A stretch of DNA of 64,000 nucleotides, from sequence record PQ741806.1. One strand, 5' to 3'. Each line of letters begins with the position of its first letter. Positions within the stretch are counted from its first letter, which is position 1. The translations under genes were made by a program, and so were the position numbers. The notes under the pieces were generated by a model, which made no database searches, was not told the DNA's origin, and worked only from the letters and a program-made list of their open reading frames with translations. Shown one piece after another: positions 34,955 through 46,548 of this stretch.

Positions 34955-34967
34955 AATACGAAATAAA

Positions 34968-34985
34968 GCCTCCCCGAAGGGAGGC
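34968..34985. terminator. Hairpin GCCTCCC-CGAA-GGGAGGC (identical to 860-877)
   Basis: 7-bp stem after tad1 stop. Confidence 0.85.
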
Positions 34986-34992
34986 ATTTATG

Positions 34993-35685
34993 TCAATTAC
35001 CACTATAGGTACCTTCAGTACCTTGTTCTTTACGTCTTACGAGGCGTTGATGAATTGCACTAAGAGCACGGTCCATTGAATTAATCACTACCTGATTCTC
35101 TTCACATGCAAATGGGCCTGCTTGATAACCTTCAAATAAATCTTTAACGATTTTAAGTAGACAGTCAGCAGTTAGGCCATTTACACCAACTTCTGGAACA
35201 AGTCCATTCTGCATTAGGATAACACATTCAGTCAGATTATCACCAGGCATAGCAGCTGGGTTAGTCTGAGCATTATAACCAGTTACCACATAACGTTTAG
35301 TTGCACCTGATTTCTGATCAATACCACTTGCTTCAATATTTAGACCATTTTCATCAAAATGTTCATGGCCATAAATACCTTGCATAGTTACCCATCCACC
35401 ATCTTCTTGATAAATCCAATCTACCCCATTTACATGATAAGTATCACCTGGTTCAGGGTCAGTTGGAAGATCTTTAGTAGTGGTTAATGCACGGATACGC
35501 GCATATTCTTCAATTGCAATTTGTACATCAGTTGCAGTAATTTTCTTCTCAGGTTCAGTAGCTTCATCTTGTTGAGACTTATCGCTACCTTCCTTTTGAT
35601 CATTATCCATATCGGAAGAATCTACTGTACTTTTAGCTTCTTTACTTTCTAAGGAAGCTAACCACTCAAGATTAGGTTTAGACAT
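34993..35685 (-). CDS. tad1: Tad1-family anti-defence sponge domain with acidic N-terminal extension (230 aa from MSKPN)
   Basis: C-terminal MQNG...NGLT..LL.IV.D....YQAGPFACEEN....AL....QR..RR....EGT follows the Tad1 pattern as I recall it; GAGG RBS before ATG 35685. Confidence 0.8.
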   Translation of the reverse strand: MSKPNLEWLASLESKEAKSTVDSSDMDNDQKEGSDKSQQDEATEPEKKITATDVQIAIEEYARIRALTTTKDLPTDPEPGDTYHVNGVDWIYQEDGGWVTMQGIYGHEHFDENGLNIEASGIDQKSGATKRYVVTGYNAQTNPAAMPGDNLTECVILMQNGLVPEVGVNGLTADCLLKIVKDLFEGYQAGPFACEENQVVINSMDRALSAIHQRLVRRKEQGTEGTYSGN

Positions 35686-35692
35686 ACTTACC

Positions 35693-35998
35693 TCAATAAA
35701 TGAAACCACCAATGTAAAGTGACACTACTACATCGGCAACCCGAGGGTCTTGTGAATATTTAGATTTGACTAGTTTAATAAGTTCGGCTCGATTTTTAAT
35801 GAAGCCTAGTTTCTTATTATCAATTTCTTCAGCTTTAATTAGGAAGTCATCTAACTTCTTCTTACTACCCAGTAAATTAATCACCATTTGATCAATAACT
35901 GCATTAGAATTTGATAGTTTAGTTAATTCTTGTTCAAAAACTTCCTTACGTCCTTCTGATCCAATTAAAGCTAGACCGATCTTTTTAAGTAGAGACAT
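35693..35998 (-). CDS. Hypothetical protein (101 aa)
   Basis: Between tail gene and tad1. Confidence 0.75.
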   Translation of the reverse strand: MSLLKKIGLALIGSEGRKEVFEQELTKLSNSNAVIDQMVINLLGSKKKLDDFLIKAEEIDNKKLGFIKNRAELIKLVKSKYSQDPRVADVVVSLYIGGFIY

Positions 35999-36056: not shown

Positions 36057-44832
<8,776 letters not shown>

Positions 44833-44895: not shown

Positions 44896-46548
44896 ATGAA
44901 GAAGGCATTAGTTCCTTTTAATATTTCTTTACTTATTCCTACTAAAGAACAATTAAAGTTCTTAGGTCAAGTAAAGAGTCATGAGATATTTGAAGGTTTA
45001 GGTGGTAACTTTCATGAAGATGGTTTGTTCTCTGTTTCCATTTTTGGAAGAGTTGGATCAACTGATCGTGAGAGTTTATTTGGATATATCCATTTAGGTT
45101 TAGAACTTATCCATCCAGTTGTATATCGAAACTTAATTAAATTAAAAGCTTTCTATGAAGAAATTATTCTTGGTAAGGCATTTGCAGTATTTGATGAATC
45201 TATTAAAGATTTTATCCGCGCTGATGAACTAACTGGTAAAACTGGTTATACATTCTTTTTTGATAACTGGAAACGAATTGACTTTGGGACCACTAAGTCA
45301 GGGGTTCGGCTATCAAGGTTACAATTAATCGAAAAATATAAAGATAACTGTATTTTTAAAGACATGATTGTAACACCTGCTGCTTATCGTGATGCAGAGA
45401 TTGATGAGAATAATCGTGTTGAGATGGATGAGGTCAATGAACATTATAGATATCTATTAAATCAGTCGTTTGGTGTACCTGATAGCTTTGGACCAAATGA
45501 TGACTTGAGTATCTATGATCGCAAACGAGTAGCAATGCAAAACACCGTATTAGCTATTTATGAACATTATGAACGACTGCTATCCGGTAAACGTGGATAC
45601 ATTCAATCTAAATGGGCATCCCGTCGTATTGCCAATGGTACACGTAACGTCATTAGTTCGCTAGATACTAATGCTGCTGATCTTGATTCACCTAATCGAC
45701 CAACATTCAAAGATGCCGTAGTTGGCTTACATCAAGCAGCTCGTTCAGTTGCACCGCGTACAATCTTTGCACTAAGGCAAGGTGTAGTTGGTGAAGTGTT
45801 TGATACAGTTACTAACACTGTACAGCTCATCAATAAGAAAACACTACGTTTAGAATGGGTCGATATCTCTAACGAAGATATGGATTTATGGGGAACTCCT
45901 GAAGGGCAAGAACAAATCATCAATGAGTTAGATGTCATTGAAAAACGTTCACGTGCAATTGAAATTGCTGATCATTATCTAGCCCTTATTTACGTTGATG
46001 ATAAACAGAATTTTAAAATATTCCGCAACATCGATGAGTTACCTACTAATCTAAATAAGAAATTTGTTAGACCTATTACTTATGCCGAATTAGTTTACCT
46101 TAGTGGATTAAGTATGTGGCGAACAAACTCAGCGTTTGTTACACGATATCCTGTAGAAAACTACAATAGCTCTATCCCCTGTAAGATGTATGTTAAAACA
46201 ACCGTAGTGGGTGAATTACGTTATCCGTTAAATGATCAATGGGAACGTGATGATACGTTGGAACCAGCCTTAGAATTCCCTGTGTTTGAATTAAATAAAC
46301 CAGCCCAGTGGCATGACTCAGTATCCATCTCTCCTTCTATTCTCGCGCCATTGGGGGCGGATTTCGACGGGGACACTGTATCATTTAACGCAGTTTATTC
46401 AGAGGAAGCTATCGCTGAAACAGATGCTTTCTTTAAGAAACGTATTGCATATATACATGCCGATGGTCGACTGGCATTTAGTGTTGGTGTCCATACACTC
46501 AATTTAACTCTTCGGTACATGACTGGGGAACCCAAACAAAGGGATTAA
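44896..46548 (+). CDS. rpoC: Virion RNA polymerase beta' subunit, N-terminal part with active site (gp180-like)
   Basis: DGLFSVSIFG, GYIHL, LSGKRG, ADFDGD catalytic motif. Confidence 0.93.
   Translation: MKKALVPFNISLLIPTKEQLKFLGQVKSHEIFEGLGGNFHEDGLFSVSIFGRVGSTDRESLFGYIHLGLELIHPVVYRNLIKLKAFYEEIILGKAFAVFDESIKDFIRADELTGKTGYTFFFDNWKRIDFGTTKSGVRLSRLQLIEKYKDNCIFKDMIVTPAAYRDAEIDENNRVEMDEVNEHYRYLLNQSFGVPDSFGPNDDLSIYDRKRVAMQNTVLAIYEHYERLLSGKRGYIQSKWASRRIANGTRNVISSLDTNAADLDSPNRPTFKDAVVGLHQAARSVAPRTIFALRQGVVGEVFDTVTNTVQLINKKTLRLEWVDISNEDMDLWGTPEGQEQIINELDVIEKRSRAIEIADHYLALIYVDDKQNFKIFRNIDELPTNLNKKFVRPITYAELVYLSGLSMWRTNSAFVTRYPVENYNSSIPCKMYVKTTVVGELRYPLNDQWERDDTLEPALEFPVFELNKPAQWHDSVSISPSILAPLGADFDGDTVSFNAVYSEEAIAETDAFFKKRIAYIHADGRLAFSVGVHTLNLTLRYMTGEPKQRD

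What the first reader, a model, noticed from the sequence alone, without database searches (positions are those of the whole stretch)
34993..35685. Tad1 anti-Thoeris/CBASS sponge fused to a virion-propeptide-like N-terminus, in the tail operon
Seen: the C-terminal about 115 aa follow the Tad1 pattern. The N-terminal about 115 aa are acidic and low-complexity, contain S/A-X-E sites (ASLE, ATE, AIE) and a short LPTDPEPGDTYHVNGVDWIY..GGW module. The gene ends the minus-strand run from the tape-measure gene, before a hairpin. Established: Tad1 proteins (about 125 aa) sequester gcADPR and cyclic oligonucleotides, and phiKZ-type prohead proteases cut head proteins after S/A/G-X-E. I recall a Tad1 homolog being noted in phiKZ, so the domain itself is probably not new. 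Inference: this sponge may be packaged, processed and injected with the genome. Several typical Tad1 positions look changed (HEY to KRY, DRL to DLF, W to I), so ligand specificity may differ.
Basis: partly seen in the sequence, partly recalled or inferred. Interest (0 to 1): 0.72.

Follow-up and report, generated by a model that had tools for sequence, protein, structure and literature searches.

The report
phiKZ gp184: packaged, injected Tad1 sponge

Summary
The ORF at 34993-35685 (minus strand, 230 aa) is real. It is 100% identical to PDB 8Y6V chain I, "gp184" of phage phiKZ. Residues 109-230 form a Tad1 domain. A family profile matches solved Tad1 chains at E 4e-12. An AlphaFold model (pLDDT 94) has only Tad1 structures among its top 20 PDB matches (TM 0.68-0.75). 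The four residues that bind gcADPR and cyclic dinucleotides are kept.

Residues 1-59 are acidic and predicted disordered. Residues about 60-108 are a small beta module, the only part seen in the capsid cryo-EM map. That module ends in a G-x-E protease motif.

Published work already shows that gp184 is a head protein cut by protease gp175. It sits in the inner vertex complex, is injected and non-essential, and is named Tad1.

Corrections: the neighbours are baseplate and tail genes, but gp184 is a head protein. Same-strand genes continue after the terminator.

Possibly new details:
- The two residues that bind cyclic trinucleotides in CbTad1 are replaced (E195, N202).
- The docking module also occurs in another phiPA3 virion protein.
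- Some uncultured jumbo phages fuse Tad1 to a capsid-protein-like domain.

The parts
34993..35685 (-). gp184 (tad1) coding sequence, 230 aa plus stop codon
   Evidence: ORF and sequence. 100% identical to PDB 8y6v_I 'gp184'. Annotated PHIKZ184 'structural protein' in AF399011.
35509..35685 (-). Residues 1-59: acidic, predicted-disordered leader carrying S/A-x-E tripeptides (SLE 11-13, SKE 14-16, ATE 42-44, AIE 57-59). Likely the capsid-targeting and propeptide part.
   Evidence: Composition. pLDDT below 50 over residues 1-69. An S/G-[L/I]-E tripeptide at residues 10-14 is kept in 17 of 20 relatives. The boundary at residue 59 is my inference.
35362..35508 (-). Residues 60-108: beta-rich capsid-docking module ending in G106-H107-E108, a candidate gp175 cleavage site that would release the sponge.
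   Evidence: Predicted strands at 82-85, 88-92 and 98-100. The 34 modelled residues of 8y6v_I match the full-length model (TM 0.82, 100% identity) but do not appear when only residues 109-230 are searched, so they lie upstream of residue 109. The capsid paper describes a beta-strand fragment wedged between gp86 and the major capsid protein. Residues 56-111 are 54% identical to phiPA3 gp096 residues 181-235, including the G-x-E ending.
34996..35361 (-). Residues 109-230: Tad1 sponge domain (beta-sheet plus two long helices). Pocket residues are Y187, N197, R214 and R218.
   Evidence: Solved Tad1 chains match at E 2e-6 and 4e-12. AF2 model has pLDDT 94.2. Foldseek's top 20 hits are all Tad1, TM 0.68-0.75.
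34958..34985 (-). Intrinsic-terminator-like hairpin (7-bp GC-rich stem, UUCG loop) plus T-run, 8 nt after the stop codon.
   Evidence: RNA fold -19.6 kcal/mol, z = -4.64.
35690..35694 (-). Shine-Dalgarno-like GAGGT, ending 4 nt before the ATG. Its first two bases are the last two of the gp183 stop codon, so the two genes are tightly coupled.
   Evidence: Read directly from the sequence.
35693..35998 (-). gp183, 101 aa, function unknown, immediately upstream on the same transcript.
   Evidence: Matches phrog_27341, function unknown.
36057..38051 (-). gp182, 664 aa, baseplate spacer ring protein (context gene).
   Evidence: The structural atlas paper assigns gp182 as the spacer ring.
38107..44832 (-). 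gp181, about 2240 aa, tail-associated peptidoglycan hydrolase.
   Evidence: annotations.
38072..38099 (-). Terminator-like hairpin (12 pairs) between gp181 and gp182.

Best explanation
The gene encodes phiKZ gp184, also called Tad1. It is a three-part precursor that delivers a ready-made immune-signal sponge into the next host cell.

The three parts:
1. An acidic, disordered leader (about residues 1-59).
2. A beta module of about 50 residues. It docks on the inner face of each capsid vertex, between gp86 and a major-capsid-protein subunit of the hexamer next to the penton.
3. A 122-residue Tad1 domain (109-230).

Proposed course of events:
- The precursor is built into the prohead.
- The head protease gp175 cuts it at S/A/G-x-E sites. 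Cleavage is published. The exact site that frees the sponge is my inference: after G106-H107-E108.
- The docking peptide stays on the shell, and the Tad1 domain leaves with the DNA at infection. Injection of the C-terminally tagged protein is published.
- In the cell the domain sequesters Thoeris gcADPR and CBASS cyclic dinucleotides in a conserved pocket (Y187, N197, R214, R218) before any phage gene is expressed.

Two further inferences:
- The canonical cyclic-trinucleotide site of CbTad1 and CmTad1 is probably absent, because E195 and N202 replace the Arg and Thr.
- With five vertex complexes per vertex, the packaged dose is at most about 55-60 copies per virion.
For: My tests:
- Identity with 8y6v_I gp184 and with PHIKZ184.
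- Tad1 homology and fold.
- Pocket residues kept, and invariant in 20/20 and 64/64 relatives.
- The 34 residues seen in the capsid lie upstream of residue 109.
- The module ends in G-x-E. The same module, with the same ending, occurs in phiPA3 virion protein gp096.
- A G-x-E motif ends 3-8 residues before the Tad1 domain in 16 of 20 relatives.
- Cutting at E108 would leave 122 aa, the size of stand-alone Tad1 proteins (123-138 aa chains).

Published evidence:
- Inner vertex-binding complex, five per vertex, and gp175 cleavage.
- Injected, using a C-terminal 3xFLAG tag.
- Non-essential. The authors state that the N-terminus is wedged in the capsid and that the C-terminus is liberated by the protease and injected.
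- Counters Thoeris and CBASS by sequestration, per citations of Li et al. 2024.
- AntiDefenseFinder calls Tad1 in phiKZ.
- The homolog 201phi2-1 gp280 is noted as identified by mass spectrometry.

On the cyclic-trinucleotide point:
- The phiKZ clade has E at the CbTad1 R90 position in 12/13 rows.
- In a tad1-intact phiKZ, cAAA-dependent CBASS/NucC is still triggered and is neutralised by adding Acb2.
Against: - I could not read Thomas 2012 or the final Li 2024 paper. The exact cleavage sites and the measured ligand spectrum of phiKZ Tad1 are therefore unknown to me. The E108 site and the loss of trinucleotide binding are inferences.
- The number of S/A/G-x-E motifs is not above chance.
- Relatives are not independent, so positional conservation counts are inflated.
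- About 60 copies per virion is a very small buffering capacity. Newly made protein may matter more than the injected dose.
- The full-length AF2 model is poor (pLDDT 55.8).
- The NucC observation could equally reflect too little Tad1 rather than a missing site.
Confidence: 0.9

Rival explanations
1. gp184 is a full two-site sponge like CbTad1. It would be a hexamer binding cyclic trinucleotides at the trimer-of-dimers interface as well as gcADPR and cyclic dinucleotides.
For: The review summarises phiKZ Tad1 as countering both CBASS and Thoeris. CbTad1 and CmTad1 are hexamers with two trinucleotide sites. Another basic residue nearby (R206 in phiKZ, R at position 205 in 13 of 20 relatives) could in principle substitute.
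Against: - Both phosphate-binding residues are replaced: R90 to E195 and T97 to N202.
- The hydrophobic hexamer contact (CmTad1 M102/W103/K106) aligns with S209/A210/Q213.
- Only 6 of 51 wider relatives keep the Arg.
- cAAA-NucC CBASS is still activated by tad1-intact phiKZ.
Confidence: 0.3
2. The injected dose is incidental. The sponge works mainly as protein newly made during infection, and the capsid-bound part is the selected function of packaging (vertex stabilisation).
For: At most about 55-60 copies fit per capsid (five per vertex). The paper proposes the vertex complex as stabilising. The gene lies among late structural genes.
Against: - The gene is non-essential, with near-neutral competitive index.
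- Goslar has the vertex complex without a gp184 homolog, so the docking peptide is dispensable for structure.
- The C-terminal part is demonstrably injected.
- Relatives without the beta module keep the N-terminal leader and the motif before the domain, and 201phi2-1 gp280 was found by mass spectrometry.
Confidence: 0.15
3. The Tad1-like domain is a degenerate structural remnant with no ligand binding, and gp184 is only a minor capsid cement protein.
For: Only the N-terminal module is visible in the capsid map. Pfam, NCBIfam and PADLOC give no hit for the protein.
Against: Pocket residues N197, R214 and R218 are invariant in all 64 aligned relatives, and position 187 is aromatic in 61 of 64. 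The fold is predicted with high confidence. The literature treats it as an active anti-defence protein.
Confidence: 0.03

Closest known systems
phiKZ gp184 / Tad1 (PDB 8Y6V chain I; PHIKZ184, AAL83085)
   Same: Identical protein, 230 of 230 residues, at the same locus.
   Different: Nothing in the protein. The window comes from a phiKZ-type phage that lacks the gp179 insertion elsewhere in the genome.
Stand-alone Tad1 sponges: CbTad1 (7UAV, 7UAW, 8SMD, 8KBE-H), CmTad1 (8KBB-D), SBSphiJ7 Tad1
   Same: Same fold (TM 0.68-0.75). Same gcADPR/cyclic-dinucleotide pocket residues. tblastn reaches the founding SBSphiJ7 gene, annotated Tad1 (H72).
   Different: - 20-28% identity.
- A 108-residue N-terminal extension for packaging.
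- The Arg and Thr of the trinucleotide site and the Met/Trp/Lys hexamer contact are not kept.
- Encoded in a virulent jumbo phage among structural genes rather than as a small early or prophage gene.
phiKZ gp93 and gp162 (inner-body / minor capsid proteins)
   Same: Same logic: an N-terminal piece bound to the inner capsid surface, gp175 cleavage, and a C-terminal domain released and injected.
   Different: Their cargo is a helix-rich inner-body domain of unknown activity, not a known anti-defence sponge. No sequence similarity to gp184 was seen.
phiPA3 gp096 (virion structural protein) and its relatives in phiPA3-like phages
   Same: Shares the docking module: 54% identity over 56 residues, ending in the same G-x-E.
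   Different: The module sits at residues 181-235 of a 321-aa protein in the inner-body gene cluster. There is no Tad1 domain. phiPA3's own Tad1 homolog gp217 lacks the module.
Phage T4 internal protein IPI* (from my own knowledge, not tested here)
   Same: A pre-made anti-defence protein. It is targeted to the prohead by a short N-terminal sequence, trimmed by the prohead protease after a glutamate, and injected with the DNA to block a host defence.
   Different: It is unrelated in sequence and fold. It inhibits a restriction enzyme by binding the protein rather than sequestering a small-molecule signal.

Membership tests
Tad1 (Thoeris anti-defence 1) sponge family | Significant sequence similarity to experimentally characterised Tad1 proteins | tested here: met
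   phmmer against PDB gives E 2e-6 to 4e-6 over residues 117-226. The family profile gives 4e-12 to 7e-11. tblastn hits SBSphiJ7 'Tad1'. PF24729 Acb2_Tad1_hairpin is precomputed on close homologs, but the local hmmscan of gp184 itself finds nothing.
Tad1 (Thoeris anti-defence 1) sponge family | Fold: N-terminal antiparallel beta-sheet followed by two long C-terminal helices | tested here: met
   AF2 model of residues 109-230 has pLDDT 94.2 and pTM 0.83. Foldseek's top 20 PDB hits are all Tad1, with probability 1.00 and TM 0.68-0.75. The next hit has E 0.15.
Tad1 (Thoeris anti-defence 1) sponge family | gcADPR / cyclic-dinucleotide pocket residues shown by mutagenesis in CbTad1 (F82, N92, R109, R113) | tested here: met
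   They align with Y187, N197, R214 and R218 (using residue names). N, R and R are invariant in the alignments.
Tad1 (Thoeris anti-defence 1) sponge family | Cyclic-trinucleotide site (CbTad1 R90 and T97; CmTad1 R88 and T95). This is a feature of the characterised members, not of the whole family. | tested here: not met
   They align with E195 and N202. E occupies this position in 12 of 13 phiKZ-clade rows, and only 6 of 51 wider relatives have R.
Tad1 (Thoeris anti-defence 1) sponge family | Homo-hexamer (trimer of dimers) | tested here: inconclusive
   The interface residues named for CmTad1 are mostly replaced in gp184. No multimer prediction or measurement was available.
Tad1 (Thoeris anti-defence 1) sponge family | Binds and sequesters gcADPR, and inhibits Thoeris | not testable with these tools
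   Reported for phiKZ Tad1 only through citations of Li et al. 2024. The paper itself was not readable.
phiKZ head proteins processed by prohead protease gp175 | Present in the purified capsid | tested here: met
   The sequence is identical to a chain of the capsid cryo-EM entry 8Y6V. The paper text agrees.
phiKZ head proteins processed by prohead protease gp175 | Cleavage after S/A/G-x-E | tested here: inconclusive
   Seven such motifs are present, five of them in residues 1-108, with positions conserved among relatives. The count is not above chance.
Injected (ejection) proteins of Chimalliviridae | Detected in the recipient cell without new protein synthesis | not testable with these tools
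   Published western blot with gp184-3xFLAG in gentamicin-treated cells.

The most novel reading that the evidence does not exclude
Three details that I did not find stated in the papers I could read.
1. phiKZ-clade Tad1 has lost, or never had, the cyclic-trinucleotide site and perhaps the hexamer. It would then be a sponge for gcADPR and cyclic dinucleotides only. That would explain why cAAA-NucC CBASS still fires on phiKZ.
2. The beta module of about 50 residues, together with its G-x-E ending, is a portable 'dock-and-release' cassette. It carries Tad1 in phiKZ-like phages and a different virion protein in phiPA3-like phages.
3. Attaching Tad1 to capsid-related N-terminal parts recurs in uncultured jumbo phages, including fusions to a domain resembling the insertion domain of the phiKZ-type major capsid protein.
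Probability: 0.4. Interest if true: 0.4.

Novelty: already known. Interest (0 to 1): 0.15.

Why it matters
Delivering a ready-made signal sponge with the genome lets a phage blunt Thoeris and CBASS before it expresses any gene. This is a neat solution for a phage whose DNA is otherwise shielded but whose infection can still be sensed. It has been worked out and published for phiKZ gp184, so the value here is confirmation. The blind reading of raw sequence recovered the domain identity, the processing and the injection correctly. The residual points could refine what is known, but they are incremental. They are the absent trinucleotide-site residues, the modular docking cassette and the other capsid-linked Tad1 fusions.

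Tried and rejected
- Pfam, NCBIfam and PADLOC scans of gp184 gave no meaningful hit. PF24729 appears only as a precomputed tag on homologs.
- The full-length AF2 model was poor (pLDDT 55.8) and superposed badly on Tad1 (TM about 0.42). The domain-only model with a deeper alignment solved this.
- Counting S/A/G-x-E motifs as evidence of processing was rejected, because 7 observed is within chance (4.6 +/- 1.8).
- Thomas et al. 2012 (cleavage sites) and the final Li et al. 2024 Nature paper were not available by PMC id, DOI or PubMed id. The 2023 preprint of Li et al. does not mention phiKZ. The supplements of Fossati 2023 held no gp184 cleavage coordinates.
- The search for related loci in viral contigs found no relative of the capsid-domain-Tad1 fusion P0103.
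- I considered that the docking module alone decides packaging. I rejected this because 201phi2-1 gp280, which lacks the module, is noted as identified by mass spectrometry.
- I considered a true 'tail operon' reading. It holds only loosely, because a terminator-like hairpin follows gp181 and gp184 is a head protein.

Full report
**1. What is there**

On the minus strand, an ATG at 35685 opens a 230-codon frame that ends at 34993. It is preceded by GAGG, which overlaps the stop codon of the upstream gene. The longer TTG-started frame from 35712 listed by the ORF tool has no such support.

The 1.3-kb region is 99.9-100% identical to about 47 phiKZ-type Pseudomonas phages. In phiKZ the same frame is annotated PHIKZ184, 'structural protein'.

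The protein is identical over all 230 residues to chain I, 'gp184', of PDB entry 8Y6V, the phiKZ capsid. The window is the reverse complement of the phiKZ map. Elsewhere in the window the best match is phage Pa_AttikonH10, not phiKZ itself.

**2. Anatomy**

*(i) Residues 1-59.* This stretch is acidic and serine/threonine-rich, and AlphaFold gives pLDDT below 50.

*(ii) Residues about 60-108.* These form three short beta-strands. The deposited capsid model of gp184 has only 34 residues. They match my full-length model at 100% identity and TM 0.82. They are absent from the hit list when only residues 109-230 are searched. The capsid-bound piece therefore lies upstream of residue 109. This agrees with the paper, which describes a beta-strand fragment filling the gap between gp86 and one major-capsid subunit in each of the five vertex-binding complexes per vertex.

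*(iii) Residues 109-230.* This is a Tad1 domain.
- Single-sequence E-values against solved Tad1 chains are 2e-6 to 4e-6.
- A profile of 20 relatives reaches 4e-12.
- A model built with 64 relatives has pLDDT 94.2.
- Its 20 best PDB matches are all CbTad1 or CmTad1, with TM 0.68-0.75. The next hit has E 0.15.
- tblastn also reaches the founding Bacillus phage SBSphiJ7 gene, annotated Tad1.

**3. Ligand sites**

I used the residue names given in the Li et al. preprint and the alignment printed by HMMER. The numbering offset was fixed by requiring all eight named CbTad1 residues that fall inside the alignment to match.

- *gcADPR / cyclic-dinucleotide pocket.* F82, N92, R109 and R113 correspond to Y187, N197, R214 and R218. 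The last three are invariant in 20 close and 64 wider relatives, and position 187 is aromatic in 61 of 64.
- *Cyclic-trinucleotide site.* The two residues that hold the phosphates (R90 and T97) correspond to E195 and N202. The phiKZ clade has glutamate at the first position in 12 of 13 rows, and only 6 of 51 wider relatives have arginine.
- *Hexamer contact.* The Met/Trp/Lys contact of CmTad1 aligns with S209, A210 and Q213.

I infer that the Thoeris and dinucleotide pocket is intact. The canonical trinucleotide site, and perhaps the hexamer, is not. A published observation fits this: tad1-intact phiKZ still triggers the cAAA-NucC CBASS, and adding the sponge Acb2 relieves it. Too little Tad1 would explain that observation as well.

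The third is off by one residue.

**4. Processing**

S/A/G-x-E tripeptides occur at residues 11, 14, 42, 57 and 106 in the N-terminal half. Their number is not above chance, but their positions are conserved:
- 17 of 20 relatives have S/G-[L/I]-E at residues 10-14;
- 16 of 20 have a G-x-E (S-G-E in two of them) ending 3-8 residues before the Tad1 domain.

The docking module is 54% identical to residues 181-235 of phiPA3 gp096, a virion structural protein in the inner-body gene cluster. Both copies end in G-x-E.

Cutting after E108 would leave a 122-residue protein, the size of stand-alone Tad1. The capsid paper says gp184 has verified gp175 cleavage sites and that an end of the resolved piece lies near one. 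I could not obtain the coordinates.

**5. Surroundings**

- *Upstream on the same strand.* gp181 is a tail-associated peptidoglycan hydrolase of about 2240 aa. A terminator-like hairpin follows it. Then come gp182, the baseplate spacer ring, and the small unknown gp183.
- *Downstream.* A strong terminator hairpin follows gp184. Genes on the same strand then continue, from gp185 to gp200.
- *Synteny.* The order gp181-gp182-...-Tad1 homolog is kept in phiPA3 (gp213, 214, 217) and in 201phi2-1 (gp276, 277, 280).

The phiPA3 and 201phi2-1 homologs (189 and 199 aa) lack the beta module but keep an acidic leader. Packaging is therefore probably general in the clade and does not depend on the module alone.

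**6. What is already published**

- gp184 is one of seven proteins of the inner vertex-binding complex and is cleaved by gp175.
- It interacts with inner-body proteins and is injected. This was shown with a C-terminal FLAG tag in translation-blocked cells.
- AntiDefenseFinder finds Tad1 as the only known anti-defence gene of phiKZ.
- A transposon study names orf184 tad1 and finds it non-essential. It states that its N-terminus is wedged into the capsid while the C-terminus is liberated by the head protease and injected.
- A 2026 review says phiKZ injects Tad1, which blocks CBASS and Thoeris by sequestration, citing Li et al. 2024.

**7. Mechanism and uncertainties**

The shown steps are identity, fold, pocket conservation and capsid location. 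Cleavage, injection and anti-defence role are shown by others. The inferred steps are the releasing site at E108, a targeting role for the leader, loss of the trinucleotide site, and a dose of at most about 55-60 copies per virion (five per vertex). That small dose leaves open how much the injected protein contributes compared with newly made protein.

**8. Wider family**

An exhaustive search with residues 109-230 found 2133 cluster representatives at E 1e-3 or better. Of the 166 proteins in hand, 60 carry 60 or more extra N-terminal residues.

Three of them (346-484 aa) start with a region matching the phiKZ-type major capsid protein family. The matched profile positions correspond to the insertion-domain region given in the capsid paper. 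One of these genes lies on a 252-kb metagenomic contig among small unknown genes. This is a side observation and was only partly followed.

**9. Verdict**

The interest score is low. The only possibly new points are incremental.

Noticed in passing
window 44896-46548 (+): A single 550-aa ORF for the virion RNA-polymerase beta-like protein. phiKZ itself has gp180 (490 aa), gp179 and spacer here. The window lacks about 1.45 kb present in phiKZ, PhiPizzaParty, U1B and phi9_PA9, and is 100% identical here to phage Pa_AttikonH10. The window is therefore a phiKZ-type phage without the gp179 insertion.
   Followed up: partly
L004:10001-11455 (JGI contig Ga0597978_000002, 252 kb); also proteins P0072 and P0103: Tad1 domains at the C-terminus of 346-484-aa proteins. 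Their N-terminal 90-230 residues match the phiKZ-type major capsid protein family (PF25620, phrog_3231), in the region of the capsid insertion domain. This may be another way of linking the sponge to capsids. A 206-aa neighbouring gene has a faint hit to the same family.
   Followed up: partly
L002:3001-3165 (phiPA3 gp096, residues 181-235): The capsid-docking module of gp184, including its terminal G-x-E, occurs inside a different virion structural protein of phiPA3-like phages. Their own Tad1 homolog (gp217) lacks it. This points to module shuffling between packaged proteins.
   Followed up: partly
L007:3764-4363 (201phi2-1 gp280): This Tad1 homolog lacks the beta module but carries the GenBank note 'identified using mass spectrometry'. 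That suggests the acidic leader alone may suffice for packaging.
   Followed up: no
window 38072-38099 (-): A 12-pair terminator-like hairpin lies in the 55-nt gap between gp181 and gp182. The tail hydrolase gene and the gp182-gp184 group may therefore be separate transcripts.
   Followed up: no
proteins P0020-P0166: Among the closest 166 Tad1-domain proteins, 60 have N-terminal extensions of 60 or more residues and 20 have C-terminal extensions of 40 or more. Most extensions have no Pfam match, and one carries Phage_gp49_66. Multi-domain Tad1 proteins seem common and largely undescribed.
   Followed up: partly
window 34996-35685 (-): The database's precomputed Pfam tag PF24729 (Acb2_Tad1_hairpin) is attached to close homologs of gp184. 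The local hmmscan of gp184 and of those homologs returns no hit even at E 10, which is a sensitivity or threshold discrepancy between the two resources.
   Followed up: no
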